From: Octopus bimaculoides
Taxonomy: Eukaryota
Direction: 5' to 3'
Length of the DNA stretch: 42,049 bases
Assembly: GCF_001194135.2 (NCBI RefSeq)
Contig: NC_068993.1
Span: 24,903,983-24,946,031 of the forward strand
Part shown: in pieces, positions 910-28,469 of the stretch
How the letters are laid out: the number at the start of each line of letters is the position of its first letter
How positions within the stretch are numbered: the first letter of the stretch is position 1
The notes under the pieces: model-generated
The model's database searches: none
Told to the model about the DNA's origin: nothing
Seen by the model: the letters and a program-made list of their open reading frames with translations, nothing else
Made by a program: the position numbers and the translations under genes

Positions 910-1054
910 ATGAAATCTTTTGTCGGACTGATAATTAACATTTGGATATGTCTGGGAGTGATCTTACTAACAACCAGTTTGACATCGTGTGTTAGTGTGG
1001 TTACTCCATCAGATGTCGCAATTGAGGTGGATCAAAATGAGACGGTGTTGTTCG
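910..1054 (+). CDS. Coding exon 1 of an unnamed single-pass type I membrane protein (signal peptide + start of ectodomain)
   Basis: ATG at 910; MKSFVGLIINIWICLGVILLTTSLTSCVSVVTPSDVAIEVDQNETVLF: basic N-terminus, hydrophobic core, NET sequon; ends at G|GTAAGT donor (1055), phase 1. A possible upstream acceptor (ctttcAG, 881-882) suggests a 5'UTR exon may exist. Linkage to exon 2 across 24.4 kb is inferred from phase and architecture. Confidence 0.72.
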
Positions 1055-1290
1055 GTAAGTGTATAAATTTATTTTAACTATGATTTAATGTAATTTGCAG
1101 GACACTGTATTCCAGATGCCCCTTTTTACCAGATTTTGCGAAATTAGTACCGAAACTTTTAGAATCATAAGTAAAACGGATTAGTCCAAACCATAGTGGA
1201 AATTAGGAATTCATCTACCACTTGCCTAGCACCACTGGAACTTGAATAAAATAATGGTTCAATGGTCGGCTATAGGTTGTGTAAAAATTC

Positions 1291-1292
1291 AC

Positions 1293-1327
<35 letters not shown>

Positions 1328-1707
1328 CACACNNNNNNNNNNNNNNNNNNNNNNNNNNNNNNNNNNNNNNNNNNNNNNNNNNNNNNNNNNNNNNNNNNNN
1401 NNNNNNNNNNNNNNNNNNNNNNNNNNNNNNNNNNNNNNNNNNNNNNNNNNNNNNNNNNNNNNNNNNNNNNNNNNNNNNNNNNNNNNNNNNNNNNNNNNNN
1501 NNNNNNNNNNNNNNNNNNNNNNNNNNNNNNNNNNNNNNNNNNNNNNNNNNNNNNNNNNNNNNNNNNNNNNNNNNNNNNNNNNNNNNNNTATATATATATA
1601 TATATATATCATATATAATATATATACATACATATACAATATTATATGTAAATATAGTTGTATATATATGTACATATTTGTCTATTTATACACACACACA
1701 CATACAT

Positions 1708-1749
<42 letters not shown>

Positions 1750-1767
1750 TGATAGATAGATAGATAT
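1291..1767. repeat. (CA)n - N gap (1333-1589) - (TA)n - (GATA)n microsatellite block
   Basis: Direct inspection. Confidence 0.95.
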
Positions 1768-2005
1768 TCATGTGTGTGTATTTATGTATTAACATAGAGG
1801 CTATTCCGGAGATGACAGTCCGAATCCAGTATTTTTATATGGCAGTCCGTAGAATTTAAACGGTTAACTTTCAATGAAGAATTGAAATTTCAGCACATTG
1901 TATAATATTAACCCAGTAGATTCAGTATCGAATACTTACATGCGGTAAATACCTGAGTCGAAAGACACTTGCTTAACCGTATACTTTTATCAGACCACTA
2001 CGAAG

Positions 2006-2142
2006 CACTAGCGTAGCTAGAGTGTTTGCCGCCCGGGGCGGCCCTTCTGTTTGCCGCCCCCGGACCCCTACAGCAATAGCCTATAACACGATAAAAAGTG
2101 CCGACCGGGGCGGACCGTCCCCCCCCCCCCGATACGCTAGTG
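2006..2142. mobile_element. hAT-type MITE, 137 bp
   Basis: TIRs CACTAGCGTAGC / GATACGCTAGTG (11/12); 8-bp TSD ctacgaag (1998-2005) / ctccgaag (2143-2150), 7/8 identical. Confidence 0.75.
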
Positions 2143-2319
2143 CTCCGAAGAATCATATAGGCTGTACGGCGTATTCGAGTTTTTTTTTTGTTTTTTTTTT
2201 TGTATTCAAAGGCTTAGAATTTTCTGCCTCTTTAAAATATAAATCTAGTTCTTGAAGGTCCTAAATTTTTTTTACAAACAAGTTAAATTTTTAAAATCTT
2301 AATATCAAAACAAATACAG

Positions 2320-2320
<1 letters not shown>

Positions 2321-2351
<31 letters not shown>

Positions 2352-2995
2352 TACTTTTAATCTGCATGTTTTGTTACAATCACTTGCCGAGACACATCCA
2401 GTGTCCTAGGGTGAGTGAAGGATAAGAGATGTTACACTATGACTAAAAGCTTGGGGAGGGGAAGTGACAGGAGCTGTAGCGAAATATTTTCATATAATAC
2501 AACAGACATTTAAATTGATAAGGTTTTTCTAAGGATGTGGGCAGTACTTGTCATCATAATATTTTGGATTTCTTTGAGACATGGTTCTCCTGGGATATTA
2601 TCTAGATGTTTTTGACTTTTCTTATCATACCTAGAGCACCTACAATAATAGGAACGGTTCTCGCTTTAAGATGCCACATCTTTTGTATTTCAATTTCCAG
2701 GTTCTTATATTTACTTAATTAGTCAAATTCCTTTACGGATATATTTTTTATAAGTGGGAACACTTCTATTATTCTACAAGTATTTTCTTCCTTGTCTTTA
2801 ATGACTTTGTCTGGTCGATTAGCTTGAATCGTTCTGTCGACGTTGACTGGAAAATCCCAGAAGATAGTGACATTTTTTTTACCTTTAACCACTGGCTCAG
2901 GATGATGTTCGTACCAGTAAGCAGGAGTGTTGATTTTGTAGTGTTTACATATTTTCCAATGTTAATACTGTCCTACTCTATCGTGGCAATTTTTG
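2321..2995 (-). mobile_element. 3' fragment of an R4/Dong-like non-LTR retrotransposon (REL endonuclease) with (TAA)n tail
   Basis: Minus-strand translation HDRVGQY*HWKICKHY...WYEHHPEPV...IFWDFPV..DRTIQANRPDKVIKD...LSKYKNLEIEIQKMWHLKARTVPIIVGALGMI...TAHILRKTLSI*; 3'UTR ends in (TAA)n at 2321-2350; stops and frameshifts present. Confidence 0.85.
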
Positions 2996-3515
2996 TATTA
3001 TTATTGAGTGAAAGAGCAGTGCATGCCAGCAAAGTGACACTGAGCTAAAATATACGAAGCCCATTATACCCATCATGACTACCTGTCTGATAAGGGTACA
3101 CCAGGTACATGTATCACAACAAATGTACGCGACATGGGGATCTCGTGTCAAGATAAACAGCGAATGACCTTGCAGGTGGGGCCCAGTTAGAATTTTCTTC
3201 AGGTTGAGTAGCCCATCCTGCTCAAATGGTCCTTGAATAAGGAGTGTTTAAGGATGTTGAATGAAACACCCATACTTCCAGAGGTGAATTATTCAAACTC
3301 CAAAGAATTCCTCTCAGCACATGGCTCTGATGTTCCTCAACTACTTCTGCTCGTGATCAGAGATGCACATATCGTCAGCCACCAAAGGACATGCTCAACT
3401 GACAAGCAAATCCGTGGTATTGAGCAGAATATTTACTATTATACCAAGACAAAACATTTACATGATAACACTTCCAATAATTTAAGATCAGAAGCCATGA
3501 GAGCCAGTGTCAGGG

Positions 3516-3518
<3 letters not shown>
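2996..3518 (-). mobile_element. Non-coding SINE-like element with (TAA)n at both ends
   Basis: Minus strand ends gcatgcactgctctttcactc-AATAATAAT; the same end recurs at ~3620-3650 (tattattgggtgagagagcagcaca); no coding capacity. Confidence 0.5.
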
Positions 3519-3610
<92 letters not shown>

Positions 3611-3630
3611 CTATCATTATTATTATTATT
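3518..3630. repeat. Compound (TAT)n(CAT)n microsatellite
   Basis: Direct inspection; explains the poly-L/poly-S and poly-N/poly-D ORFs. Confidence 0.95.
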
Positions 3631-4599
3631 GGGTGAGAGAGCAGCACATACCATCATAGGTACAAATATATATTTGTACATCAATCAAATCAGATAAATC
3701 AAATAATGGAAAAGTAAGGTTTCAAATCAGTCCAAAAATGTTGTTCGCTCGTTTGTTTCGGCGATGAACTTTTTCAAGAGGATGTTCAAATTTTTAGGGG
3801 TTGGGGCGCATGCATACCCTGCCCCCTCCCACTCTACCATTCCCGAGCCAATGGTCTCATGCATTCATTACTGATAAAAAACGAGGGTCAAGAACTGATG
3901 ACATAAAACCATTGGGGCACACATACAAAAGTGTCCTCGTACCCTTCATAACTTTCAGAAAAATTGATATTTTTAATGCAATTTTCTATAAATGCATTTC
4001 AGATGGAATATATTACGATTATATCAGGAATTAGATTTAGAAAAAAAGAATGGTGAGCACGCACACATAAATACTGACACACATCGCATATTATTATCAA
4101 AAGTTCAAATTTCATTTGGTAGCTATATTTGTTATGTTTTCACATTAAATTACGATATAATCGTAATCTACACCATCTGAAAGGTATTTGCAGAAATTTC
4201 ATCAAAAATTATTAATATGATTGTTCATACACAGTTATAACACTTTTATATTGCATTATTCTATAAAAAATTACTGAAACTTTTGTAAAATATTGCAATA
4301 GAAAAGGCTATATTTTCCTTTCATTTTTAAGGACTGAAGCCATCAGATATTTACAAGCCCGGGCCCTTCTTCTGGTACCAAGTCGCAACCGAGGTGCCAG
4401 TTAATCTCACTCCCGCCAATATAAACGTAGTTTATGTCTGAAAGAACGTTTTTGACTATAAATCTGCAGTATCACAATGGCTTGAGGCTTTAACAACAAA
4501 TTATAACTCGGTGTTAGATTTTTTTTTATATACAAAAACTATAATGCGTAACACAATGAGGAAACTTAGGTAAACATAAATAAATGACTTTCACTTTCA

Positions 4600-5420
4600 T
4601 CAAATAGTGACCCTTTATAGGTTCCTTGTTAGAAGAGACTGGTTATGTATTTAGAGAATGATAATTTGCTAAGTAATACCCAACATGGTTTTCGTCAAAA
4701 CAGAATCAGTCTCGCACAGTTATTTCTATGTTGTAATTGATAAAACAGTTTCTGAACCGTTCAAATGTTGATAAATGATATATTCGATCTTTCAATAAAG
4801 CTGATCGCAGGATAATATGCCACAATTTCTTGACCTCGGTATAGTCAGAAAACAAAGAAGCGAATTTGTATGACTTAGGAAGATTCCATAGAAATAAGAT
4901 AAATAAATGAAACAGACGCCTTAATGTTACAACCATTGGTGCGCTCTCTGAAGAGTCGGATTTCCAGGGCAGGATATTAAAGAGAACTGTTTTGAGGACA
5001 TTATTGTCTTCTTATAGCTCTATCGGGCTTATTCGTGCGGTTACCATAGTCAACCCCACCACATATGCCGATAACTCAAAGAAATAAAAATACAGCAAAC
5101 AACTCCAAAGATATTAAAAACCTTCAGAAAAAAGTATATCGATTCTGTATATAAGAAAACAAGAAATTCACGATAGGATAGTTTTGATATAAACTCAACA
5201 CAGCGCAAAACATGAATACACAGAACTGGAAGAAACTGCAATATCAGAATCAGAAACTGTGGAGATCGGGGAATTGTAATGAGTAATACCCCGTTCCCGC
5301 CATGCGCATATCATGCAAATGATAAAAGCATGAAGATATGCAAAACAAGAACATAAGTGCTCATACATTTTTTCCCTAACGACATTTGCTCCCCTTCCGA
5401 GATTATTGATGCCAAATTAT
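4600..5420 (+). mobile_element. Highly decayed CR1/L2-like LINE reverse transcriptase fragment
   Basis: YLENDNLLSNTQHGFRQNR motif at ~4645-4705; later patches resemble GTVLGPLLF and RDLGI segments; many stops and frameshifts. Confidence 0.6.
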
Positions 5421-6029
5421 CCAAAGTATCGAGACAAAAACAGTTATTCCATGCCCCAGGTGGGCTATTGGGGAAAAGCTAAAGTTTTGAAGCTGTAGTC
5501 CTTAGAACAAAGACAGGAAAAAATATACAATCATCTAAATGGAGAAAACCCTTGACTAACTGGTGCCAAAAGTTGGCATTGAAAACTCCACTAATCCCGA
5601 AGCAGAGCACTATTGTACAAATCCAAAAGTTCTGACTTCTCTCTCAAGGATGAAAACAAGTTACTGTAAAAGAATGAGTTGACTCAAGCATTGTGAAAGA
5701 AACGGGGTTGCCAGAAATTGTGTAGAAGCCCGATGGATTGATTGCACTTCTGATTCAAAGGTCCGGTGTTGTCACTTATTGTACCGCTCTGATTCGCTCC
5801 CATGACTGAGTTCAGGGTGCAAATATATGTGGAATACTCAGTCACTTGGCACTAAATGCGTATTGGCAGGATTCTTATGTATGTANNNNNNNNNNCTAAA
5901 CTTTTTTTGCTACCCTGAGATTTATTAATATATATATATATATAGTCTATTGACTAGTTTTTTCTTCTCGCTAGATCAGTGGTAGCAAAAAGAATTTCTA
6001 AACTTTTTTTGCTACCCTGAGATTTATTA

Positions 6030-6064
<35 letters not shown>

Positions 6065-6414
6065 TACTCACAATACACACATGCACATACATTATGAGTA
6101 TGTGTGTTTGTGCGCGGGAGGTGTATGACAGACAGACAGACAGACAGACAGATAATCTTTTATCTGCGTACACAAAAACCTCAAGCACACACACATACAC
6201 ATACATATGTGTGGTTACATATTTAAGTTAATGTATAAATGTATTATCTAAGATATATATGAGTATTATAATTTTGTCTTATCTGTTGCCATTGTTCACA
6301 ACTACATGATTGATTGAACTTTGATACATCATTAGCTGGTATGATCTTTGATAAAACTCAACCAAACATTCATATCGTTTTTAATGTTGTATTATGTTTT
6401 ACTTCACAACAATA

Positions 6415-6470
6415 ATAGACAAGAGCACTCCGAAAGCGCAAACCTCCGCCAAGGCAGCGCCAACGTCCTC
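6415..6470 (+). mobile_element. Possible Helentron/HINE-like left terminus (isolated)
   Basis: acaagagcactccgaaagcgcaaacctccgccaagg resembles termini of molluscan non-autonomous Helentrons as I recall them; the matching ttggcggagg end was not seen. Confidence 0.3.
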
Positions 6471-7755
6471 TCGACGATTAACCGGAGATGATTTATAAAA
6501 TGAGGATATCTGAAAAGTCGCACGCATCTACTTGGAATTGAGTAGCATACGTTCATCATGTCCCACCAAAGACCGAATTGTATCTTTCTTGCTACGTTGC
6601 ACTTTTGCCATTTGGGCCCAATGATTTATAATATCGACACAAACCTTTTAATTTTGGAAGATGTTAAAGATGGTCGATATCTACTCCACTCTGAACGGCT
6701 ACTTAATTTATCAACCTCAAGGATAAACAACAACAACAACTTTTATAGTGGCCACCACCTGACTATCTCAGTTAAAACCCCCAAAGCGCCTGACTATACA
6801 CTCTGAACTCTTAACTACCCGCCACAGATACAACTTTGGTCACCATTTTACCACAGCTTATGAAGCAACAAGAAAATATCTACGTTGCTCACCTATTAGA
6901 AATAATAACCTATTCATAAACAACGATCTTCAAAACAAGGACTCTATTAAACAATGCAATCCTAAATTTTCTAGATCAATGTTTTGAGGGGGTTGTTAAA
7001 CATAATATATGAAGGACCACATTATCTGATATGTTTGCTTTAAAGATTATAGGGAATGATTTGGGGACGATTTGACTGCTATTTACAACAACTCGGGCGA
7101 CGAGACAGATAAATGTATTGACAGCTGTTGACTATAGTGAGGTGGCGATGGCTGTGACTAATCCCTCATTGAGAAAATGTGACTGCCATACCTTTACTAG
7201 TGTAAGTGTAATAATTTGCTGAAATCCTCTTTAATCACGATTGAGCTTGATCGGTGATACTTTCAACAAAAAAAGGAAACAATGGAAAGAAGTGTGGGGG
7301 GGGGGGGTCAGTATTGCTCTGTATATCCCAATACAGGTCGATGAATTTAGGATTCTGTGAGAACAAAGGTAGGCTGAATGGGTGAATGGAAAATGCATTA
7401 GAAAGGAAATCCTTTTGTTGAGCAGATCATCTGATTTCACCCGGAAATATGTTTCAAGGATCATTTGTTAAGTTATTAATCGCTTTTAAGTACGTGTATC
7501 AGTACTAAATACCCTTTAAAAATAAAATTAATCCAGCAAGCTGATCTATTGTCACCTAAATCCGAATACTAAAGGATTAATATAAATAGTTTTTGTCATT
7601 AAAATATTTTTAGACATTAAATTCAAGTTTGGCATTCTTAACAATTTCTTACCGAAATGATATAAAGTCTCGACATTTTATTGCTGAAATGAAGCTGCTA
7701 AATTAGTCAAAGGGAGAGGAAGAGAAGGAGAAAGTCACCTAGTGGCGTGATACCG

Positions 7756-8029
7756 ATTATTATCTTATTATTTAAGTCGTCCTCAACGAATCCTCCAGTG
7801 TTCCCTCCGGCCATCTCGGTACTCCATGAAACCTGCTAGTTGGTCAGTAATTTCCTCTTCTACAACTTTTTTAGTACATTCACATACATTGGCATACCGA
7901 CGTTCTTCGATATCCCTCTGTTTGCTCCCATAGTATCAGATGGCAGGCTGAATGGAAACTTCCAGTTTCTCTGGTAGTGTCCAGCCAGCCTCATTCTTCT
8001 GACTGTTATTTCTCGCTCACCCGTTACAC
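7756..8029 (-). mobile_element. Decayed RTE-type LINE 3' end
   Basis: Minus strand RRMRLAGH...HLILWEQTEGYRR...MYVNVLKK...MEYRDG resembles the RTE RT C-terminus; short taa-rich tail at ~7756-7776. Confidence 0.55.
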
Positions 8030-8240
8030 CAGTGGTTCTCAACCAGGGTCCAGATAAGATTCTGTTGTTAAAATTTGCGCAATAAATTGCTTATACAGGA
8101 AATATTTTAACAATTTTTTTATACACTTGCTAATAATATTTCATGATAAAAATATGAGGATTTCTGAAAACATGGAATGGCTATGGGGGTCCACCCGAGT
8201 AAAATAAGCATCAAAGGGGTTCATAGGTTGAAAATCACTG
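8030..8240. mobile_element. hAT/Charlie-type MITE, 211 bp
   Basis: TIRs CAGTGGTTCTCAACC / GGTTGAAAATCACTG (13/15); diverged 8-bp TSD cgttacac / ctttacat. Confidence 0.75.
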
Positions 8241-8389
8241 CTTTACATAGTAACTCGCTATACAGAAGCATATTGCTAATGTGTTCGTTTTCTTTGATGT
8301 TAAGTATTGCATTCAGCATTCCTCTAGAGATTTGTGTCGGGTAGGCATTCACAGCCTTTCAGTCAATTGTAGAAACTGATGTGTCCAGA

Positions 8390-8565
8390 TGTCGTTTAGC
8401 CCCAGCTCTAACTTGATTTCACTGAAAGACCTATAACCAAAGGTAGTCTTGTCATGACCATCCTGCCTTTTTTATATATCAGAACCATATAAGTGTAATA
8501 TATCCTCGTCTAAGGTGTGATTTAAGAGAATTTAGGTGCTATTTGTAGCAGACTGAGTGACCAGG
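8390..8565 (-). mobile_element. SINE family D ((AAC)-tailed) copy
   Basis: gtcgtttagccccag...gacctataacc...gtgatttaagagaatttaggtgctatttgtagcag shared with copies at 17435, 24540, 26136, 26335 and 27940. Confidence 0.6.
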
Positions 8566-10071
8566 ATCAAGCTTCTTCATTGGCTCATATCAATAAATCA
8601 GTGGAGTACAGTAGTGAAATCGAGTTTCAGTCATATTATTACGACTGACTGACCAAAGTATCAAAGAATAAAAGAGCAGGAATTTGTGAAATCTTGAAGA
8701 ATTACTTATTTTGCATTGTTTTCTTTTTCACCTCAAAGATCTTTTCAAGAAACAACCACCATCATCATATAAACACACTCACAAAAGTATTCAACTTTGA
8801 TCTTAACATTATTTTCACATCACTTAAAGTTGCAATATAATGATTTTTCATCATCTGTAAACTTCTAAAACGGTTTGAAGCTATATAGTTTGAAGTCGAT
8901 AACGTAATTCTTGTTAGTAATATTCTGGCTGTAAATGAAAACCTTCTATTGAAATGTTGTCAGGAATGGTCTAATAAAAGCTTTGCGCAAGCACTGACAA
9001 TGGCAGGGTTCCAACAGTCCAGAATGATTTTTGAAAACCTAGAGTTTGAATCATTGTACAGGTGACGGGCTTTGTCAAAGCTAAATATATTTCAAAAGTA
9101 TATTTCCCTCATGACAATAGCTAGATCAAAGGTTGCAGACATGAGGTATTGCTTTACTCATGTAAAAATATATATAAGATTGTCTCTTGTTTTAGCCCCC
9201 ACTTGATTTTTAGAACTTGGTTTCTATTGTGCCATTGTCATCGACGTCACTATTAGTGCAGTTAAGTGTGTGTGTATGCACATGTGTATGTATGTGCGCG
9301 TGTGACTGAGTGAAAATGATATTCTTGCTGCAAATGAAGCCATTTTATTGAGTTAATGCTATAAATTATTTATTAAAAGCATTTATCAAGCATTGGCGAT
9401 AGCAGTGTCCAACAGTTTAGAATTATTATTGAATCCTTACGATCGAATCACTAAAACATCGGTCAGATGCATCAGAAGAGTTTAGTAAAGCTTCGGAACC
9501 ATGAGTACGCGCGTGCGTATATGTGTGCGTGTTCGTGTATGCGTGTGTGTGTGCTCGCGCGCGTGCGTGTGTGTGTTGTTGTTGTTGTTGTTTATGCCAA
9601 ATTGCAATAAAAAACAATTTGATATTACGCTGAGTTTAACATTAAACTCAATGTTTAGAATACATGTTTCTTTAAGTGGAATAATAAACGAAAAGGGAAA
9701 TGTGGAAAACTTCTAACAATGTGGAGAGGGAAGTTGAGAAACTTTTATATACTTCAGACAGAAACGCCCATCCTCAGAAGGATATCTACGGAGTCTACGT
9801 TGATCCTGCCGTTTCGATAACCGATTGGGCAATGACCTCGCTTAGTCCGCTGAGTGTGCTAGCAGCAGCAGTTTCCAAAAGATGGTGTTGTCGGTGCCGT
9901 AGAGGTCGCAGTTGAGGCAGTGGAGACAGTGGTGGATGATTGGCCGTCTATTTTCGTTTATTATTCTAATTCTGTGCTACAATGCTTCAAGCGAACTATA
10001 ACGCTCTTCTTTCATATTTATACAAGAGGAGTGACACTAACTTCGAAGTTTCGGCCAGCTAGCCTTCGGCA

Positions 10072-10114
<43 letters not shown>

Positions 10115-12625: not shown

Positions 12626-12698
12626 CCTACATACATACATACATACATACATACATACATACAAACAAACAAACAAACAAACAAACAAACAAACAAAT

Positions 12699-17587: not shown

Positions 17588-17648
17588 TTGCTGGCACAAA
17601 ATGCCTTAGCATGCATACAGATGAACTACTATTTCCCTTTTACCACGA

Positions 17649-20590: not shown

Positions 20591-20925
20591 CAAGCTTTCC
20601 AACTACAGGTTCCCACTGCATGACACCTTGGGCATGTGTCTTCTACATAGCTTCGGGTCAACTAAAGCCTTGTGAGTGGAATTCATAGAGGGAAACTGAA
20701 AGAAGCCCATGGTATATAAATATGTGTCTGTTTTTGTCCCCCACCACCATTTAACAACTGGTGCTGGTATGTTTATGTCCTTGTTACTTAGTGGTTCAAC
20801 AAAAGAGACTGATAGAATAAGTACGAGCTTTAAAAAATGTACACTGGGGTCGATTTGTACAGCTAAACTTCTTCATGGTGATGCCCCAGCATAGCCACAG
20901 TCTAATGACTGAAACTAGTAAAAGA
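20591..20925 (+). mobile_element. SINE family B copy (CpG-decayed)
   Basis: cccactgcatgacaccttgggc...aaagccttgtgagtgga...ggaaactgaaagaagccc...gactgaaactagtaaaag. Confidence 0.8.
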
Positions 20926-21210
20926 TTAACATGTGTTACTTCTTCTCTTGTCTTATATCCATTCCTCCTCTCTCAATAATCCTTATTTATCCATCAATAC
21001 TAGTAAAATATTTCTTCACTCCTTAACTGGTTCTACCCTGATAGACTTCTAACAATTTATTTCACTGTTTAAACTATTTGTATTATTTTGCCCATACAAA
21101 TCAAAACTCATTTCCTCAGGCAAAGCCCAACCTTCACATAGCTACACCCTTTGACCCACAATAAATCAGTTATAATATTTCAACTGTTAACAGAAGTAGT
21201 TAGCTACACC

Positions 21211-21575
21211 TTTTACCTTTTACTTGTTCCAGTCATTAGACTGCAGCCATGCTGAGGCATCGCCTTGAAAACTTTTTAGTCAAATGAATTGATTCCAGTA
21301 ATTATTTCTTTTTTAAAACCTGATACTTATCCTATTGATCTCTTTTGCACTGAACTCCGAAGTTATGGGGGTGTAAACATACCAACACCAGTTGTAAAGT
21401 GGTGGTTGGGGACAAACATACACACACACACACACACACAGTGGGCTTCTTTCAGTTTCTGTCTACCAAATCCACTCAAGGCTTTGTTTGGCCCAAGATG
21501 CTACACACAGTGGGACTCAACCCAGAACCATGTGGTTGGGAAGCAAACTTCTTACCACACAGCCACACCTATGCC
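21211..21575 (-). mobile_element. SINE family B full-length copy
   Basis: Reverse complement from the tRNA-like head (cttaccacacagccacacc) to the ttttacttg tail, with internal (CA)n. Confidence 0.85.
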
Positions 21576-22169
21576 TTTGGTAGTTTTTGTTTTTGTTTTT
21601 ACTTGATAATTTAATCTTTTATGCTTTTAATGGGGTCCCCCCCCCCCCCNNNNNNNNNNNNNNNNNNNNNNNNNNNNNNNNNNNNNNNNNNNNNNNNNCC
21701 CCCCCCCGTGAAAATATGTTGTTAATTTCATCTCCTAACACCCATCCCTCCAACAACCTTCTAACTGTGGTACTACTCACTAGGGTGCTATAAATGATAC
21801 CACTTATTCCTCTCAACTTCACATTGTATCCTTACCACTGTCCCTTATCACCTCCTCCTCCTCTTTGACCCATTCCTATTTTCTTTCCTTCATTTGTCCT
21901 CCTCCAAACTGATATTCATTACCCCCACTTCAATCCCCATCTCTCATCATCTGTCACACCATTTTCACTCTATTGCACTTACCTACCCGCCCACCTTTAT
22001 GTCCCTCTATCCTTATTCTTTCTTTCATATTCACCTTGTACCATGACTTCACCTCTCTCTCTCTCTCTCTCTCTCCCCACCCACTCCATTCCAGATGGGA
22101 AGCCATGTATTCCCCTCTTCACCAAGTTGCCTGCTCCTGTTACTTTATCATATTTTTACATCTCTCAAT

Positions 22170-22480
22170 ATAATGTCCCACTCAGTTGAGGGGGTCTTAT
22201 CTTGCAGACACCAAGTGACCTCACCAGTGCTGGTGCCTCAAGAAAATAACTCTCAGTAAGCTATGTAGAGCAGTTGGCATTAAGAAGGGCATCCAGCTGT
22301 AGAAATCATACCTAAAAAGACATTAGAGTTCAGCACATGCCCTCTGGCTTGTCAGTTCCTATCAAACTAGTCAACCCATGTCAGCTTTGTAGTATTTCAT
22401 CCATCTTTACATTCTAAGTTCAAATTCTGCCAAGGTTGACTTCACCGAAATTGCTGGCCTTGTCTCAAAATTTGAAACTA
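22170..22480 (+). mobile_element. Decayed SINE family C copy followed by a family A fragment
   Basis: ggcattaagaagggcatccagctgtagaaa...caacccatg; then gttcaaattctgccaaggttgac...aattgctggccttgt. Confidence 0.6.
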
Positions 22481-23234
22481 AATATTGATGATGTATAGGT
22501 GTATGTGTGTGTGTGTATTTATATAAAAATACGCATATGCATGTATATAATGAAAATAAATACATAAATACACACACACATGTGTGTGTGTGTGTGTTTT
22601 GCAAATTAAATTATTGGTGTCTGATACGTGAATAACTTAAAGGTTGTTATATGTGGGTTTCAAATACTAAAGTGTGTTGTCACGTAGTCGTAAACAACTC
22701 ATAGATCTTAACACTATATATTGACATAGTGCTTTTTTCTCTCTAAGCTTTATGAGCTTTCAGTTAACATTTATTTCCTGCTTGATGTTGAATGTTTAGT
22801 AAATCTTGATAATGATTTTAAGATAGTTTTGCATAAAACATAGACTTGAAAGTATTTATGAAGTATAAAGATAAGTTTGATGATGTTAAAAAACATAACA
22901 TTAAACATTTAATTGACATGTTTCTTTCTTCAAACCTGTAGATAAGAAAAAACAAATATATATATACATAGATTTATTTATTTCAAGTTTCATTCATTTA
23001 CACATGTTTTAGAGACACTGGTTTCCATATAAAAGTAGTGCAGTGATTTGCTGTCCTATTACACACATACATAATATTTAATGACTCAGTCAACAAAAGT
23101 ATGTACAAAGCCACTTTCTTTATTGATATAGTTACAAACACAAGACATTGATTGAAAACATGTCAGATAACCATTAAAGAAATTCCTTGCATAACTGGTA
23201 TGGCAATTTGAAATAATAAAAACAATGGGAAATA

Positions 23235-23436
23235 GGCAGCCAGCTGGCAGAAACTTTAGCATGCTTAGTGGTATTTCATCTGTCTTCACATTCTGAGTTC
23301 AAATTCCACCAAGGTCAACTTTGCCTTTCATCCTTTCAGGGTTGATAAATTAAGTACCTGTTGTGTACTGAGGTCAATCTAATCGACTGGCCCCCACCCC
23401 AAAAATTTTGGGCCTTGTGCCTAGAGTAGAAATAAG
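23235..23436 (+). mobile_element. SINE family A copy (CpG sites deaminated)
   Basis: gctggcagaaac...gagttcaaattccaccaaggtcaactttgcctttcatcctttcagggttgataaattaagtacc. Confidence 0.85.
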
Positions 23437-23587
23437 AACAATGGGAAATGAGAGGAATTCTTTTCTGTGTATTTTGACTAAATTCAATTCCATTTGTGAC
23501 TGAAGGTAACCATAATCTTCACTGATAAACATATCCAGTCAGTTTTCTAGTGTTGCTTCTGAAAGTGCTTTACTAAGATGAACTAAC

Positions 23588-23942
23588 AGATGCAGGATTG
23601 GCTGAGTGGTAAGAAGCTTGCTTCCCAACGACATTGTTCCAGATTCAGTCCCATTGCAATGGCACCTTAGGCAAGTGTCTTCTACTAGCCTTGGGCTGAT
23701 CAAAGCCTTGTGAGTGGATTTGGTAGACGGAAACTGCAAGAAGCCCATCATGTGTGTGTGTGTTTGTCCACCACCACCGCTTAACAACTGTTGTGTTTAC
23801 ATTCCTGTAACTTAGTGGTTTGGCAAAAGAGACCAATAGAATAAGTACTAGGGTCGATTCATTTGACTAACAACTCTTCAAGGCAGTGCCCCAGCATGGC
23901 CATAGTCTAATGACTGAAACAAGTAAAAGATAAAAGATAAGA
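23588..23942 (+). mobile_element. SINE family B full-length copy
   Basis: tRNA-like head ggctgagtggtaagaagcttgcttcccaac...ttcagtccc, body, and gactgaaacaagtaaaagataaaaga tail. Confidence 0.85.
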
Positions 23943-24303
23943 AATCACATATTTAACAAAGTAATAAAGAGGTGAGACATTTAGAAGTGTAGTCTTTCTT
24001 TACCTCTGACAACAAGCATGATAATATTTTACCTAAAATCCATACATACCTTCAACAACCAGAACAACTCTACATTCCAGAAATGTTTATATTCTGAACA
24101 GATTTCTTATCAGACCTTTCAATCATTTCCATCTACTTTGACCTATCCTGTATTTAATGACAGAAATAATTGAATTCAAGCAACAAAACAAATAAAAAAA
24201 AATGTATATATCTTCCTCCTCTTACTGTTGAGCTAGTCAGTTGTTTACAGTAAAAGTTTATGTCATTTTGTTGTGCTCTTCAACACATTTTCCTGAAGTA
24301 AAT

Positions 24304-24480
24304 TCATTATCATCATCATTTAACGTGTTTTCTATGCTGGTGTGGGTTGGGCAGTTTGGCTGGAGCTGGTAAGGCCAGGGACTGCATCAGGCTCCATTGT
24401 CTGGTTTCTATGGTTGGATGCCCTTCCTAACGCCAACCCCTCCACAGAGTGTACTGGGTGCTTTTATGTGGCACCAACCC
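24304..24480 (-). mobile_element. SINE family C 3' part
   Basis: catcatcatttaac...ggttggatgcccttcctaacgccaacc matches the copies at 37737 and 39568. Confidence 0.7.
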
Positions 24481-24539
24481 CAATATTTTTAACATGGAAT
24501 CTGCACAAGTGCTTTTGTGGGCCTTCTTGAATACAGATT

Positions 24540-24866
24540 GTAGTCGTTACCACTGACTGAGCAAGCCTATACTAAAAGTGTTCCAGTTGTAATCATCCCA
24601 CCTTGTATAAAGTCTAGTATTTAATCTATCAGTCCCTTTTGCTAAATAGCTAAGTTATGTAGACATAAACAAACTGAAACCAGTGGTCAAGCAGTGGTGG
24701 GGGACAACACAAACATGCACACACACACATATAGATATATAGATATACAACAGGTTTCTTTCAGTTTCCACCTACCAAATCTACTCTCAAGAAGACACAG
24801 TGTGATTTAAGAGAATTTAGTTACTATTTCTAACAGTTTAAGAGACCACTTACAGGCTCCCTCATT
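24540..24866 (-). mobile_element. SINE family D copy interrupted by a family B fragment (~24640-24790)
   Basis: gagcaagcctat...catcccacc and gtgatttaagagaatttagttactatttctaacag flank ttttgctaaatagctaagtt...tttctttcagtttccacctaccaaatc. Confidence 0.55.
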
Positions 24867-25208
24867 GTTTTGCTTCTGAGCACCTTTGGTAAGTGATGTG
24901 ATGGTCATTTTCAAACTGGGTTGCAGAGCTGCATGGCTCGCCAGAAATGTATTTCATGTTATGACTCCTATATTTAGCAGTGAAACTTAAGTTTAAAATA
25001 AATTGATGCAATATAAACATGAAATATTGCTTCTCATATTGAGATGTGTAACAGACTCCTTAGATTTGTTTACATAGTTAATACGGTGTAACCAAAGCAA
25101 CTGGTGATATGATAGTTTGACCAAAATTACTGGCTGTAGCAAGTAAAAATAAATATTGAGAAAAATGCATTTGGCCAAATTTGGGCATACAACTGTTTAA
25201 CATAATAG

Positions 25209-25247
<39 letters not shown>

Positions 25248-25468
25248 AATACACATATACATATATATGTGTGTGTGTGTGTGAAGGCATGTGGCTTAGT
25301 GGTTAGGGCATTCGGTTCACGATCGTAAGGAAGATTTGGGATGTCATTAGGATTAGGGTGTGGAATGCTGACCTGTCCAGTTCATTGTCATATTTTCAAG
25401 CAGTGACTGCTCAGATATTATAATTATTTTCTTATTTTCTCTGTATTATTGTTTTTTTGTTTTTCCAG

Positions 25469-25549
25469 TTGGAACAGATAATGGAACAATGTATGAAGCA
25501 GAAGATAAAAGCAAAATTGCAGTAGAAGAAAATTCTAATACTTTAGTGG
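25469..25549 (+). CDS. Coding exon 2 (81 nt, phase 1-1, ectodomain)
   Basis: Long pyrimidine tract gtttttttgtttttccAG; (V)GTDNGTMYEAEDKSKIAVEENSNTLV; donor G|GTAAGT at 25550. Confidence 0.85.
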
Positions 25550-25984: not shown

Positions 25985-26063
25985 TTGTCTTATTGGTGTT
26001 GGGATGCACTTTCCTGTTCGCCTTTTTCCTCAGTTTTGTTGCTGTTCTCTACAGATATCACCG
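25985..26063 (+). CDS. Coding exon 3 (79 nt, phase 1-2, transmembrane helix)
   Basis: Acceptor tttcttttgctttcAG; (V)VLLVLGCTFLFAFFLSFVAVLYRYH(R) = hydrophobic helix followed by positive-inside residues; donor CG|GTGAGT at 26064. Confidence 0.9.
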
Positions 26064-26135
26064 GTGAGTTTTTCTTCTTATTTTCCCTTCATTGATTTAT
26101 TAAACATCTACATCACACCAGCACAGAAACCTCTT

Positions 26136-26529
26136 CATAGTTGCTTAATCTATTAGAGATAACAACCAAATTTCTATCACATCACACTGTATTATCTTTT
26201 CAAAATGACAGAGTACATTATATAACATATTACTAGATATCTCATGCCTGAAAAAACAGACCTGGTGTTGATCATGACTTTTGATCATAGGTCTGCTTAA
26301 TCTGGGCTGATTTGGAGCTAATTTGTACAGTTGTTTAACTCCAGATCAGAGCTGATCAAGCAGATCTATAATGAAGTGTTCCAACCAAGACCAGCCCATC
26401 TTTTTATACATCTATGACTACATTTTCCAATGTCTTACATTATTTTTAAGATGATAGGGTGATTTGAAGGAGAGTTGACTTTTATTTTTATCAATTTTTA
26501 GCAACTGTGTAGAGGCACCCTGTTGTTGA
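26136..26529. mobile_element. Tail-to-tail inverted pair of family D SINEs (26136-26321 +, 26335-26529 -)
   Basis: gatcataggtctgcttaatctgggctgatttggagctaa is complementary to ttaactccagatcagagctgatcaagcagatctataat; ~13-nt spacer. Confidence 0.7.
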
Positions 26530-26640
26530 TAAACCCTGATTAGGAAGACATGAACAAAACTACTCCAACCATAACCATAAGTACCAGTTTAGCACTGAAG
26601 TTGATGTAATCAACTAACCCACTCCCCTTAAAATTACTTG

Positions 26641-26841
26641 CAAGCTGGCAGAATCATTATCATGCTGGACGAAACATTTCGTGGCATTTCTTCCAGTTTT
26701 ATGTTGTGAATTCAAATGCCACTGCAGTTGAGCTGATGTTTCAGGGTTGATAAACTAAAGTACCAGTCAAAATAAGTACCAGTTGAACACAGGTCTACGT
26801 GCCCTGAAATTGCTGGCCTTGTGCCAAAATTTGAAATCATT
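26641..26841 (+). mobile_element. SINE family A copy (decayed)
   Basis: caagctggcagaatc...gaattcaaatgccac...aaattgctggccttgtgccaaaatttgaaa. Confidence 0.7.
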
Positions 26842-26860
26842 ATATTAACAGTGTTAATAA

Positions 26861-27222
26861 ACACAGGCAAGGCTGTGTGGTAAGAAGCTTGCTTCCCAAC
26901 CACATGATTCTGGGTTCAGTACCACTGCATGGCACCTTGGGCAAGTGTCTTCTATTCTAGCCTTGGGCCGACTTGTGAGTGGATTTGGTAGACATAAACT
27001 GAAAGAAGCCCATCGTATATGTGCGTTTGTCCCCCACCACTGCTTGACAACCATTGTTGGTTTGTCTATGTCCCAGTAACTCAGCAGTTCAGCAAAAAAG
27101 ACCAATAGAATAAGTGCTAGGCTTAAGAAAAAGTAAGTCCTGGGGTCAATTCATTCAACTAAAACCCTTCAAGGCAGTGCCTCAATATGGCCACAGTTAA
27201 TTGATTGAAATAAGTAAAAGAG
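26861..27222 (+). mobile_element. SINE family B full-length copy
   Basis: ggctgtgtggtaagaagcttgcttcccaaccacatg...ttgaaataagtaaaagag. Confidence 0.85.
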
Positions 27223-27556
27223 GATGCTTTATTGTTGAAAATTCTGAGTTTTGGATCTACTTTAGCTCCATTCTTTACAACAAATACCATTTTGTTAATT
27301 TTCTCCAAACTTTTCTTAAACTAAAAGTTAAATTTTGTAAAATAAAATCAAAATGTTTTTTCAACTTATGGAGAACACATTGCTAGTGGTTGTTGTAAGT
27401 TGTATGAAATGCCATCATTGTATGACTACCTTAAAAAAAAAACAGACTACTTCATACCATAGAAGTTTCAAGCTCTATATCTTCCATCCTCCTAGCTATG
27501 AAAAAAGACCTTTTGGGATAGGTACACTCAAATATTGCAATATTCGTTGATGGTAA

Positions 27557-27732
27557 GGTGACAAGCTGGCAGAATCGTTAGCATGCCAGGTAAAATGCTT
27601 TACGGCATTTTGTCTGTCTTAATATTCTGATTTCAAATTCCACTGAAGTTGACTTTGCCTTTCATCTTTTCAGGGTCAATGTAATCAACTTATCCCCTCC
27701 CCCAAAATTATTGGCTTTGTGCCAAAAATTAG
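27557..27732 (+). mobile_element. SINE family A copy (CpG sites deaminated)
   Basis: ggtgacaagctggcagaatcgttagcatgcc...ttcaaattccactgaagttgactttgcc. Confidence 0.8.
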
Positions 27733-27939
27733 TAATTTGTGAATGGTATCCAAATGATTTTAAAATTGACATGGTTTTGGTGACTTCAGATTTAGATCAG
27801 CATCGGCAATGTGAATACTTCTACTGTAGACAGGCCTGTAGGTGGACTTGAAATTTCATACTAATAATACATTCTCTGTGGGTATCTCAATGAAATACTT
27901 AACCTGCATAGGGAAATAAACAACAGGAGTCTGTATTTG

Positions 27940-28051
27940 ATGATACAGTCTTGGGTATACCATAACTGAAGAAAAGAGATCATGCTACTCATGACTGGAA
28001 TGTTGTTAATCATAGATCTGTTCAGTCAGTGCTAACCTGGGGCTAAACAAC
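27940..28051 (+). mobile_element. SINE family D 3' part
   Basis: catagatctgttcagtcagtgctaacctggggctaaacaac. Confidence 0.55.
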
Positions 28052-28273
28052 TCACAGTGTTTCTGCCTACCACTGACTCTGGCTAGTATCTCAGTAACTT
28101 CTTCATATTATTATCTGTAGTGAATTAAAACAGCATTTATCATATTAAATCATCAACTTTGACCCACAAACCCTTACTACATTGGATTGTATTTCCATGC
28201 CTGAGTAACAAAAATGATCTGCAAAAATATAATCTTTTATTAGTGAATAAATATTTTGTTTCTCCTTTTTCAG

Positions 28274-28469
28274 CCGTAAGACTGCTGAATACCAGCGTGC
28301 TGCACAGGCCCATATAACATCAACACGTAATGCTGGCATCTACATGGATCTTGCCATGGATTCTCCAATCTCTAAATCTGGCTTACCTATAGGTGCACCA
28401 ATCTATAATTCATTGAAGAAACATCCAGAACAGTATACATTTGTATCAGATGATGAACTTGACTTATAA
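28274..28469 (+). CDS. Terminal coding exon 4 (cytoplasmic tail, stop TAA 28467-28469)
   Basis: Acceptor tttgtttctcctttttcAG; phase 2 fits exon 3; RKTAEYQRAAQAHITSTRNAGIYMDLAMDSPISKSGLPIGAPIYNSLKKHPEQYTFVSDDELDL*. Total CDS 145+81+79+196=501 nt = 166 aa + stop. Confidence 0.88.

What the first reader, a model, noticed from the sequence alone, without database searches (positions are those of the whole stretch)
910..28469. Hidden 4-exon gene for a 166-aa transmembrane-adaptor-like protein
Seen: four exons with canonical splice sites join in frame to MKSFVGLIINIWICLGVILLTTSLTSCVSVVTPSDVAIEVDQNETVLFVGTDNGTMYEAEDKSKIAVEENSNTLVVVLLVLGCTFLFAFFLSFVAVLYRYHRRKTAEYQRAAQAHITSTRNAGIYMDLAMDSPISKSGLPIGAPIYNSLKKHPEQYTFVSDDELDL. 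It has a signal peptide, a tiny ectodomain with two sequons (N43ET, N53GT), Cys at 27 and 83, one TM helix and a non-catalytic Tyr-rich tail. Established: vertebrate transmembrane adaptors (SIT1, TRAT1/TRIM) have this layout (short ectodomain, disulfide dimer, SH2-docking tyrosines). Inference: an analogous, possibly mollusc- or cephalopod-restricted signalling adaptor. I recognise no homolog.
Basis: partly seen in the sequence, partly recalled or inferred. Interest (0 to 1): 0.72.

Follow-up and report, generated by a model that had tools for sequence, protein, structure and literature searches.

The report
Annotated octopus single-pass membrane protein gene

Summary
Exons 910-1054, 25469-25549, 25985-26063 and 28274-28469 (+) join in frame to the claimed 166 aa. 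All introns are GT..AG, and all four assembly gaps lie in intron 1. An RNA-derived contig from another octopus runs through all three junctions.

The gene is not hidden. The protein is identical to XP_014790398.1, "uncharacterized protein LOC106883781 isoform X1" of Octopus bimaculoides. A second annotated isoform (126 aa, no signal peptide) starts at an alternative first exon inside intron 1 (15218-15242). Both forms are transcribed in Sepia esculenta.

Homologs exist in chitons, bivalves, gastropods and cephalopods, all unnamed. Oyster and octopus share intron phases 1-1-2. No Pfam family or solved structure matches.

Selection acts on the tail (dN/dS 0.06-0.08) far more than on the ectodomain (0.4-0.7). 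The tail holds an invariant A-G-x-Y box, YxxΦ (Φ = hydrophobic) motifs and an acidic Ser-containing C-terminus.

Most likely it is a small glycosylated single-pass protein whose tail docks cytosolic partners. The SIT1/TRAT1 analogy holds only for layout: the disulfide dimer and the canonical SH2, ITIM and ITAM motifs are not supported. This is an ordinary orphan gene of modest interest.

The parts
866..909 (+). 5' UTR, the part that is supported, contiguous with exon 1a
   Evidence: The octopus mRNA contig L001, positions 3-51, aligns to window 866-909 directly upstream of the ATG. The true transcription start was not determined.
910..1054 (+). Coding exon 1a (145 nt, ends in phase 1). It encodes residues 1-48: the hydrophobic signal sequence, C27 and sequon N43ET.
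   Evidence: ATG at 910 and donor TTCG|gtaagt. The L001 block ends at 1053/1054. Hydropathy peak at residues 4-22. AF2 helix 2-25.
1055..25468 (+). Intron 1 (24.4 kb) of isoform X1. It holds all four assembly gaps of the finding, interspersed repeats and the alternative exon 1b.
   Evidence: Collinear with O. vulgaris L002 at 81-93% identity. The gap equivalents there are mostly microsatellites without N.
15218..15242 (+). Alternative first coding exon 1b (25 nt, phase 1), encoding MIHYNEKI plus one base. It gives isoform X2 (126 aa), which has no signal peptide.
   Evidence: Exact match to the N-terminus of XP_014790399.1 (P0041), with donor ATAG|gtatgt. The same exon lies at L002 25925 in O. 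vulgaris. Homologous N-termini MIDYTEKL (Sepia esculenta RNA, 18 contigs) and MIEYKEKL (P0067) were found.
25469..25549 (+). Coding exon 2 (81 nt, phase 1 to phase 1). It encodes residues 49-75, the membrane-proximal ectodomain with sequon N53GT.
   Evidence: Acceptor ttttccag|TT and donor GTGG|gtaagt. The L001 block covers 25475-25549.
25985..26063 (+). Coding exon 3 (79 nt, phase 1 to phase 2). It encodes residues 76-102: the transmembrane helix and YRYHR.
   Evidence: Acceptor gctttcag|TT and donor ACCG|gtgagt. The L001 block covers 25984-26063. Hydropathy peak at 73-91. AF2 helix from residue 71 with pLDDT 82-91.
28274..28469 (+). Coding exon 4 with the stop codon. It encodes residues 102-166, the conserved cytoplasmic tail: AEYQRAA..STRNAGIYMDL, PIYNSLKK and QYTFVSDDELDL.
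   Evidence: Acceptor ctttttcag|CC. dN/dS is 0.06-0.08. A122, G123 and Y125 are invariant in 19 family members. The last intron sits in the same Arg codon and phase as in oyster.
28470..29369 (+). 3' UTR, at least about 900 nt
   Evidence: L001 358-1385 aligns to 28275-29369 at 74% identity. AATAAA occurs at 29581 and 29736. The poly(A) site was not determined.

Best explanation
This is the already annotated Octopus bimaculoides gene LOC106883781. It has four coding exons over 27.6 kb, plus an alternative first exon.

It encodes a small single-pass membrane glycoprotein oriented N-terminus out and C-terminus in. Isoform X1 would get this orientation from a cleavable signal peptide. Isoform X2 would get it from reverse signal-anchor insertion (type III).

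It is the cephalopod ortholog of a single-copy-looking family, so far found only in molluscs. The ectodomain of that family is short, glycosylated and fast-evolving. The constrained parts are the TM segment and the roughly 68-residue cytoplasmic tail.

Inferred mechanism: the protein works through its tail as a membrane-anchored docking strip for cytosolic proteins. The tail has three parts.
- A membrane-proximal, probably helical, basic block ends in the invariant N-A-G-[VI]-Y-x-D box.
- A YxxΦ motif (Y146NSL) follows.
- A distal Tyr is followed by an acidic, CK2-type Ser cluster at the C-terminus (QYTFVSDDELDL).

The combination of YxxΦ with a phosphorylatable acidic cluster is the classic layout of signals that cycle membrane proteins between the cell surface, endosomes and the TGN. 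I therefore favour adaptor-mediated sorting, with Tyr and Ser phosphorylation as the likely switch, over a dedicated immune phosphotyrosine adaptor.

Shown: the gene model, its transcription in relatives, the family, and the pattern of selection. Inferred: topology, glycosylation, motif function and partners.
For: Gene and transcripts:
- The translation is exact and identical to XP_014790398.1 / A0A0L8I6Q9.
- The orthologous spliced octopus RNA contig crosses all junctions.
- Sepia esculenta RNA-seq holds both isoforms, in 17 and 18 contigs.

Family:
- An exhaustive profile search of 1.84 billion representatives gave 17 hits at E<=1e-3, all small proteins of 85-173 aa.
- Named members come from chiton, bivalves, gastropods and cephalopods only.
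- Oyster and octopus share intron phases 1-1-2, and the last intron lies in the same Arg codon.

Constraint:
- dN/dS is 0.06-0.08 for the tail, 0.15-0.51 for the TM and 0.38-0.69 for the signal peptide plus ectodomain among octopods.
- A122, G123 and Y125 are invariant, and V124 and L149 nearly so.

Topology:
- Hydropathy peaks, sequons only N-terminal of the TM in the cephalopod members, and RYHRRK just after the TM.
- AF2 predicts a helix at 71-130 and disorder elsewhere.

Motifs:
- YxxΦ at 125, 146 and 156 and SDDE at 160.
- Y.SL...Y-E-x-D-S-D-D-E-[ILF]-COOH is conserved in chiton, bivalves and cephalopods, and gastropods also end in an acidic stretch.
Against: No experiment or paper bears on this family.

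The most conserved block, EY.R..K.Q.SS.RNAGVY.D, matches no motif class I could test, so the core function is unexplained.

The +3 position after the invariant Tyr is Thr or Pro in many members (YMDT, YVDP), so that Tyr is not a conserved YxxΦ signal.

Gastropod orthologs lack Y146 and Y156 altogether. The sorting-signal pair therefore cannot be the family's universal mechanism.

Signal-peptide cleavage, glycosylation and phosphorylation are predictions only. SignalP and DeepTMHMM were not available.

The match to furin-type signals rests on my knowledge of those motifs, not on a tool.
Confidence: 0.55

Rival explanations
1. The protein is a phosphotyrosine-dependent transmembrane adaptor analogous to vertebrate SIT1 or TRAT1, or to ITAM chains such as DAP12 and FcRgamma. 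In this view a disulfide-linked dimer has tail tyrosines that are phosphorylated and recruit SH2-domain proteins. In cephalopods this would work through the ITAM-like Y146NSL-x6-Y156TFV.
For: The layout fits: a tiny ectodomain, one TM and a non-catalytic tail with six Tyr.

One Tyr (Y125) is invariant across the family.

All cephalopod orthologs carry Yxx[LMI]-x6-YTF[VI]. One of them (P0067) has a canonical ITAM, YNSI-x6-YTFI.

Six of 19 members give sub-threshold hits to the Eph-receptor TM and juxtamembrane model PF14575 (best 25.1 bits, cut-off 28.9). From my knowledge, that region holds phosphorylated Y[IV]DP tyrosines.
Against: No canonical ITAM, ITIM, ITSM, YxN or YxxM motif and no CxxC is present in this protein.

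The ITAM-like pair is absent from bivalves and gastropods, so it is not the family's conserved function.

Around the invariant Tyr, conservation lies N-terminal of it (N-A-G-V), not at +1 to +3 where SH2 domains read.

The TM has no charged residue for receptor pairing.

C83 is inside the TM. C27 is at the signal-peptide cleavage site and is missing from isoform X2.

No Pfam adaptor family was hit. The tail-only profile finds no Eph chain in the PDB.
Confidence: 0.15
2. The protein is an auxiliary (beta-type) subunit of a channel, transporter or receptor, in the manner of KCNE or FXYD proteins. In this view the TM helix and the membrane-proximal helix pack against a multi-pass partner and tune its gating or trafficking. 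The distal tail would only steer localisation.
For: The size and layout are the same as single-span ancillary subunits: 100-170 aa, an N-glycosylated short N-terminus often without a signal peptide, and a conserved segment right after the TM.

Non-cephalopod members carry a GxxxGxxxG glycine zipper in the TM.

AF2 predicts one continuous helix through the TM and the conserved block, residues 71-130.

The conserved block is about 25 residues long, longer than a typical linear motif.
Against: No Pfam hit to any such family.

Cephalopods, including this protein, have lost the glycine zipper apart from G82. Their TM evolves much faster than the tail (dN/dS up to 0.51 against 0.06). That is the opposite of what a TM-mediated interface predicts.
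Confidence: 0.15
3. It is not a real gene: a chance in-frame join of short ORFs, or a pseudogene.
For: None beyond the a priori risk of stitching exons across a 24-kb intron that holds assembly gaps.
Against: A spliced orthologous RNA contig exists. The RefSeq model is identical. Orthologs with intact ORFs exist in at least 3 octopus genomes and in transcriptomes of Sepia esculenta and at least two further, unidentified, probably decapodiform cephalopods (P0004, P0067). Purifying selection acts on the tail. Intron phases are conserved with oyster.
Confidence: 0.01

Closest known systems
RefSeq LOC106883781 (XP_014790398.1 isoform X1, XP_014790399.1 isoform X2; UniProt A0A0L8I6Q9 and A0A0L8I6P1), Octopus bimaculoides. 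Orthologs: LOC115218353 (O. sinensis) and CAI9731627.1 (O. vulgaris).
   Same: Identical sequence to isoform X1. The exons and the alternative first exon are found in the window. The O. vulgaris ortholog is 91% identical with the same four-exon structure.
   Different: Nothing differs. This is the same gene. The database name is only 'uncharacterized protein'.
Unnamed mollusc family. Members include Magallana gigas LOC105342149, Crassostrea virginica LOC111126702, Mizuhopecten LOC110442769, Mya arenaria LOC128229131, Liolophura LOC135472626, Aplysia LOC101852249, and Haliotis, Gigantopelta, Patella, Batillaria and Littorina proteins.
   Same: One TM. A basic stop-transfer stretch followed by EY.R..K.Q.SS.RNAG[VI]Y.D. 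An acidic C-terminus. Size 107-173 aa. Sequons in the short N-terminal part. Intron phases 1-1-2, with the last intron in the same Arg codon in oyster.
   Different: Cephalopods lost the TM glycine zipper. They changed Y-E-x-D to Y-T-F-[VI] and extended the C-terminus to SDDELDL. The gene is 27.6 kb here against 1.1 kb in oyster. Bivalves and the chiton lack a signal peptide. Gastropods lack the two distal Tyr.
Vertebrate transmembrane adaptor proteins (SIT1, TRAT1/TRIM, LAT family) and ITAM chains (DAP12, FcRgamma)
   Same: General layout only: a very short ectodomain, one TM and a non-catalytic Tyr-bearing tail. Cephalopods also have an ITAM-like Yxx[LMI]-x6-Yxx[VI].
   Different: No sequence relation (no Pfam hit). 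No conserved extracellular Cys, no CxxC, no charged TM residue and no YxN or ITIM motif. The tail is only about 68 aa. Conservation is centred on a membrane-proximal block that these adaptors lack.
Furin-type bipartite sorting signal: YxxΦ plus a CK2-phosphorylated acidic cluster, as in furin, VZV gE and carboxypeptidase D. This is from my knowledge, not from a tool.
   Same: Y-x-x-L is followed, 6-19 residues downstream (10 in this protein, 7-8 in bivalves, 19 in the chiton), by a Ser embedded in Asp/Glu near the C-terminus. This holds in cephalopods, bivalves and the chiton.
   Different: This is a motif-level analogy only. It sits in an unrelated protein without a functional ectodomain. Gastropod orthologs lack the Tyr part.

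Membership tests
Unnamed mollusc family of LOC106883781 / LOC105342149 type | Significant sequence similarity over the TM and tail | tested here: met
   A profile built from the cephalopod sequences finds the chiton, bivalve and gastropod proteins at E 3.5e-10 to 6e-4 in an exhaustive search. The broader profile scores them at 1e-24 to 1e-37.
Unnamed mollusc family of LOC106883781 / LOC105342149 type | Conserved box [NS]-A-G-[VI]-Y-x-[DEQ] about 25 residues after the TM | tested here: met
   N121-A-G-I-Y-M-D127. A122, G123 and Y125 are invariant in 19 of 19 sequences.
Unnamed mollusc family of LOC106883781 / LOC105342149 type | Shared gene structure: intron phases 1-1-2, with the last intron in the Arg codon of Y-R-x-H-R | tested here: met
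   Octopus exon ends fall at CDS positions 145, 226 and 305. Crassostrea angulata exon ends fall at 19, 139 and 221. The last intron lies in R102 and R74 of the aligned YRYHR and YRRHR.
SIT1 / TRAT1-type disulfide-linked transmembrane adaptors | Sequence membership (a Pfam or other profile hit) | tested here: not met
   No Pfam-A family reaches its cut-off. The best hits are sub-threshold matches to unrelated membrane-protein models with E>=0.0066. I did not check which adaptor families the library holds.
SIT1 / TRAT1-type disulfide-linked transmembrane adaptors | Extracellular Cys that forms the homodimer | tested here: inconclusive
   C27 is conserved in the five signal-peptide (exon 1a) cephalopod forms aligned. 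However, it lies at -1 or +2 of the likely signal-peptide cleavage site. It is absent from isoform X2 and from non-cephalopod ectodomains. C83 is inside the TM. No cleavage-site predictor was available.
SIT1 / TRAT1-type disulfide-linked transmembrane adaptors | Several SH2-docking motifs (YxN, ITIM, YxxM) | tested here: not met
   The regular-expression scan found none in the octopus proteins. YNSM (YxxM) occurs only in the Sepia-type sequences.
ITAM signalling chains (DAP12, FcRgamma, CD3zeta) | Canonical ITAM Yxx[LI]-x6-12-Yxx[LI] | tested here: not met
   The window protein has YNSL-x6-YTFV, with Val at the last position. The motif is canonical only in P0067. It is absent from bivalves and gastropods.
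ITAM signalling chains (DAP12, FcRgamma, CD3zeta) | Acidic residue in the TM for pairing with a receptor | tested here: not met
   The TM sequence LVVVLLVLGCTFLFAFFLSFVAVLY has no charged residue.
LAT / PAG / NTAL / LIME palmitoylated adaptors | Juxtamembrane CxxC or CC palmitoylation motif | tested here: not met
   No Cys lies at or after the cytoplasmic end of the TM in any family member scanned.
Known small single-span families in Pfam (TMEM154, Syndecan, Podoplanin, CD99L2, DAP10, EphA2_TM and others) | Score at or above the Pfam gathering cut-off | tested here: not met
   All hits are below cut-off and centred on the TM. TMEM154 scores 12.8 bits for the window protein and at best 25.9 bits, against a cut-off of 30.3. 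EphA2_TM scores at best 25.1 bits against 28.9.
Proteins with a furin-type YxxΦ plus acidic-cluster sorting signal (a functional class, not a homologous family) | YxxΦ followed by a CK2-consensus Ser in an acidic cluster in the cytosolic tail | tested here: met
   Y146NSL and S160DDE. This is conserved in chiton, bivalves and cephalopods. The presence of the motif was tested. Its use by adaptors cannot be tested with these tools.

The most novel reading that the evidence does not exclude
Cephalopods may have remodelled the distal tail of an ancient mollusc-specific single-pass protein into an ITAM-like module. The ancestral Y.SL...Y-E-x-D-SDDE-Φ became Yxx[LMI]-x6-Y-T-F-[VI]-SDDELDL. This would create a lophotrochozoan ITAM-type signalling chain that recruits a Syk/Shark-type tandem-SH2 kinase. 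The two first exons would then give forms with and without the Cys-bearing N-terminus, that is, a dimeric and a monomeric form.
Probability: 0.1. Interest if true: 0.6.

Novelty: already known. Interest (0 to 1): 0.25.

Why it matters
As a gene, it adds nothing. RefSeq and UniProt already hold this exact protein and its second isoform.

What the follow-up adds is context that I found in no paper. The protein belongs to a family conserved across four mollusc classes and, so far, found only in molluscs. The family has a strongly constrained cytoplasmic tail with an invariant A-G-x-Y box, an acidic C-terminus and shared intron phases, and it is absent from Pfam.

Such lineage-restricted, motif-bearing single-pass proteins are candidates for mollusc-specific trafficking or signalling. 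The cephalopod-specific ITAM-like change is a cheap hypothesis to test. If the family proved to be a signalling or sorting adaptor, it would be a useful handle on mollusc cell biology. It would not change any general principle.

Tried and rejected
- **Pfam scans.** I scanned the window protein and 27 further family members. Only sub-threshold, TM-centred hits appeared.
- **PDB profile search with the tail alignment.** Nothing relevant: the best hit was a mitochondrial ribosomal protein at E 0.19.
- **AlphaFold2 with the family alignment.** Mean pLDDT was 61. Only the signal-peptide helix and the TM-plus-juxtamembrane helix were confident, and there is no globular fold. I therefore did not run a fold search, whose matches would be meaningless.
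- **Literature searches.** I searched by locus names, protein accessions and the NAGVY motif. There were no relevant papers, and the motif search matched only surnames.
- **Rfam and tRNA scans of the window.** Nothing found.
- **Hidden coding exons in intron 1 or its gaps that would give a large ectodomain.** Rejected. The orthologous mRNA has no extra sequence at any junction. The gap equivalents in O. vulgaris are mostly microsatellites. The long ORFs in the intron have no Pfam hit. Only the 25-nt alternative first exon is present.
- **Homology to Eph juxtamembrane, syndecan, KCNE or TMEM154.** Considered and rejected: no model reaches its cut-off, and the tail alone hits none of them.
- **Homologs outside Mollusca.** None were found among named hits. 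However, the broad-profile searches were word-seeded and the exhaustive search used a cephalopod-only profile, so absence elsewhere is not proven. A Mortierella hit at E 1.4e-3 is a low-complexity TM match.

Full report
**1. The observation**

Reading the four claimed exons and joining them (910-1054, 25469-25549, 25985-26063, 28274-28469, + strand) gives a 501-nt ORF.

The three donors are G|gtaagt, G|gtaagt and G|gtgagt. The three acceptors are long pyrimidine tracts ending in cag. The exon ends fall in phases 1, 1 and 2.

The window has five runs of N. The four named in the finding all lie inside intron 1 (1055-25468), and the fifth (40083-40792) lies downstream of the gene. No exon or reading frame therefore depends on a gap.

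I tested continuity across the gaps against the gap-free Octopus vulgaris chromosome (locus L002). The window is collinear with it from base 1 to about 37.7 kb at 81-93% identity, introns included. The flanks of every gap keep their order and strand. The O. vulgaris pieces that correspond to the gaps are 482, 272, 237 and 11 bp, without N. Three are CA/TA microsatellites and the fourth is a short T run.

**2. Is it a real gene?**

Yes, on three lines of evidence.

- *It is already annotated.* An exact look-up shows the 166-aa protein is already in public databases. It is XP_014790398.1, [quoted passage not shown] (UniProt A0A0L8I6Q9). The 90% cluster also holds O. sinensis LOC115218353 and O. 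vulgaris CAI9731627.1. The window is therefore O. bimaculoides, and the gene is not hidden.
- *A spliced orthologous transcript exists.* A 1385-nt contig assembled from run SRR3401912 carries an uninterrupted 166-codon ortholog that is 77% identical. That run is described as an octopus meta-transcriptome in PMC11662614. The contig aligns to the window in four blocks: 866-1053, 25475-25549, 25984-26063 and 28275-29369. A global alignment of the spliced window exons to it passes all three junctions without any insertion. This supports the junctions, a 5' UTR of at least 44 nt and a 3' UTR of about 900 nt.
- *Selection is visible.* Nei-Gojobori estimates among three octopods give dN/dS of 0.06-0.08 for the tail (residues 99-166). 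The values are 0.15-0.51 for the TM and 0.38-0.69 for the signal peptide plus ectodomain. Against Sepia, synonymous sites are saturated while tail dN is only 0.18.

**3. A second isoform from inside intron 1**

RefSeq isoform X2 (XP_014790399.1, 126 aa) begins MIHYNEKI and then continues with exon 2. Its first coding exon is at window 15218-15242, with donor ATAG|gtatgt. It ends in phase 1 like exon 1a, so it joins exon 2 in frame. The identical exon is present in O. vulgaris at L002 25925.

The same kind of N-terminus occurs in other cephalopods. MIDYTEKL is found in 18 RNA contigs, including run SRR19578104 of the Sepia esculenta project PRJNA844162. MIEYKEKL is found in another cephalopod transcript. 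The signal-peptide form is found in 17 contigs, including SRR20545808 of that same project.

The extra exon removes the signal peptide, C27 and the N43 sequon. It does not add a domain.

Isoform X2 has a net-acidic 32-residue N-terminus, and RYHRRK follows the TM. By the positive-inside rule (established knowledge) it should therefore insert N-terminus out, as a type III protein. Most bivalve orthologs also lack a signal peptide.

**4. The family**

An exhaustive HMMER search used a profile of five cephalopod sequences against 1.84 billion representatives. It found 17 proteins at E<=1e-3, all 85-173 aa long. Two further profile searches and a cluster look-up named the members:

| Class | Named members |
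|---|---|
| Polyplacophora (chiton) | Liolophura sinensis LOC135472626 |
| Bivalvia | Magallana gigas LOC105342149, M. angulata, Crassostrea virginica LOC111126702, Mytilus spp., Pecten, Mizuhopecten, Ylistrum, Mya arenaria, Pinctada |
| Gastropoda | Aplysia LOC101852249, Haliotis, Gigantopelta, Patella, Batillaria, Littorina |
| Cephalopoda | Octopus spp. and Sepia esculenta |

Every source name is "uncharacterized" or "hypothetical". No named hit comes from outside Mollusca.

The alignment shows these shared features:
- A variable N-terminal part that nearly always holds an N-x-[ST] sequon.
- One TM.
- A basic stretch.
- A conserved block, (A)EY.R..K.Q.SS.RNAG[VI]Y[MV]D[LT], in which A122, G123 and Y125 (octopus numbering) are invariant.
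- An acidic C-terminus.

Chiton, bivalves and cephalopods end in Y.SL...Y-E-x-D-S-D-D-E-[ILF]. Cephalopods have the variant IYNS[LMI]KK...QYTF[VI]SDDELDL. Gastropods end in SPE[TH]ERLNKEED and lack the two distal tyrosines. Non-cephalopod TM segments carry GxxxGxxxG, of which cephalopods keep only G82.

The Crassostrea angulata gene spans 1.1 kb and lies next to ATG101 and CFAP68. It has the same intron phases 1-1-2. Its last intron sits in the same Arg codon (YRRHR^A against YRYHR^R). Its first coding exon is short (19 nt), like cephalopod exon 1b. This supports orthology over the whole phylum.

**5. Comparison with known families**

No Pfam-A model reaches its cut-off for the window protein or for 27 other members. 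The hits are TM-centred and below threshold. TMEM154 scores at best 25.9 bits against a cut-off of 30.3, and EphA2_TM at best 25.1 against 28.9. Podoplanin, Syndecan, CD99L2, DAP10 and others are weaker.

The tail profile finds nothing relevant among PDB sequences.

AlphaFold2 with the family alignment gives a mean pLDDT of 61. It predicts a helix at residues 2-25, one continuous helix at 71-130 (pLDDT 72-91 over residues 71-120), and disorder elsewhere. There is no fold to search with.

Searches of the paper library by locus names, accessions and motif found nothing relevant.

**6. How it most likely works**

*Shown:* a transcribed, conserved gene for a single-pass protein whose constraint is concentrated in the cytoplasmic tail.

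*Inferred from sequence and general cell biology:*
- The N-terminus faces out and is N-glycosylated.
- The ectodomain is too short, disordered and fast-evolving to be a specific ligand-binding domain.
- The tail is a string of short docking motifs.

In this protein the motifs are YMDL (125), YNSL (146), YTFV (156) and S160DDE, followed by the C-terminal LDL.

The pairing of a YxxΦ signal with a CK2-type Ser in an acidic cluster is, from my knowledge, the layout used by furin, VZV gE and carboxypeptidase D. Those proteins cycle between the cell surface, endosomes and the TGN through AP complexes and PACS-1. I therefore favour a tail-driven sorting or escort role with phosphorylation as a switch.

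This reading has two limits.
- Gastropods lack the YxxΦ part of the pair.
- The most conserved element, the membrane-proximal block with the A-G-x-Y box, fits no motif class I could test. Its conservation lies N-terminal of the Tyr. That resembles PTB or FERM-F3 ligands more than SH2 ligands, but this is an inference, not a test.

**7.

The adaptor analogy holds for layout only. Canonical ITAM, ITIM, ITSM, YxN and YxxM motifs and a juxtamembrane CxxC are all absent from the octopus protein. The TM has no charged residue.

C83 is buried in the TM. C27 lies at -1 or +2 of the likely cleavage site (T-S-C|V, and V-H-C|S in Sepia) and is missing from isoform X2. No ectodomain Cys is a family feature.

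All cephalopod orthologs have Yxx[LMI]-x6-YTF[VI], which is ITAM-like and canonical in one species. It is a cephalopod-specific change from the ancestral Y-E-x-D. I give the phosphotyrosine-adaptor reading 0.15. I give the auxiliary-subunit reading 0.15. The latter is weakened because the cephalopod TM evolves faster than the tail.

**8. Verdict**

The gene is already annotated, however, so the novelty class is "already known".

The added value is the definition of an undescribed, apparently mollusc-restricted family with a strongly constrained tail, a conserved alternative first exon in cephalopods, and a testable ITAM-like variant. Interest is modest at 0.25.

Noticed in passing
window 34443-35061 (+): Two overlapping ORFs lie downstream of the gene. 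The second (34753-35061) matches the C-terminal part of Pfam RVT_1 (E 1.8e-11). This looks like a decayed retroelement fragment.
   Followed up: partly
window 38633-39444 (-): Two ORFs look by eye like the C-terminal region of a non-LTR retrotransposon reverse transcriptase (LLYSCETWTLY...). They gave no Pfam hit, and they are interrupted by a TATG microsatellite.
   Followed up: partly
window 20611-20929, 21210-21580, 23592-23930, 26855-27225; also 12699-12862, 16667-16833, 23234-23416; also 24304-24483, 31787-31970, 39569-39764: Three families of short interspersed repeats (about 320-370 bp, 165-190 bp and 180-195 bp) lie in the introns and flanks. Each matches several to about ten places in the 50-kb O. 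vulgaris locus at 68-88% identity, which is SINE-like behaviour.
   Followed up: no
window 14934-15064: A purine-rich 65-bp tandem duplication lies 150-280 bp upstream of the alternative first exon 1b, where that isoform's promoter or 5' UTR would be expected.
   Followed up: no
window 31644-31805 and 32621-32745: Two further tandem repeats lie downstream of the 3' UTR: a 67-bp unit in 2.4 copies and a 66-bp unit in 1.9 copies.
   Followed up: no
window 1280-1332, 1589-1770, 40038-40082, 40793-40925: At least two assembly gaps (1333-1588 and 40083-40792) are bounded by CA, TA, GT or CT microsatellites. In O. vulgaris the pieces matching the first three gaps of the finding are also microsatellites. 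The gaps therefore look like collapsed simple repeats rather than missing unique sequence.
   Followed up: yes
L013 10001-11089 (Crassostrea angulata CM046782.1): The oyster ortholog is 25 times more compact (1.1 kb against 27.6 kb) but has the same intron phases. It lies between ATG101 and CFAP68 genes. Synteny with octopus could not be checked because the window holds no neighbouring gene.
   Followed up: partly
family members P0010, P0018, P0023, P0064 and others (not in the window): Six of 19 family members give sub-threshold hits to Pfam EphA2_TM (PF14575) that span the TM plus about 35 residues. The box GVY[VM]D[PLT] recalls, from memory, the Eph juxtamembrane Y[IV]DP motif. The tail-only profile finds no Eph chain in the PDB.
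   Followed up: partly
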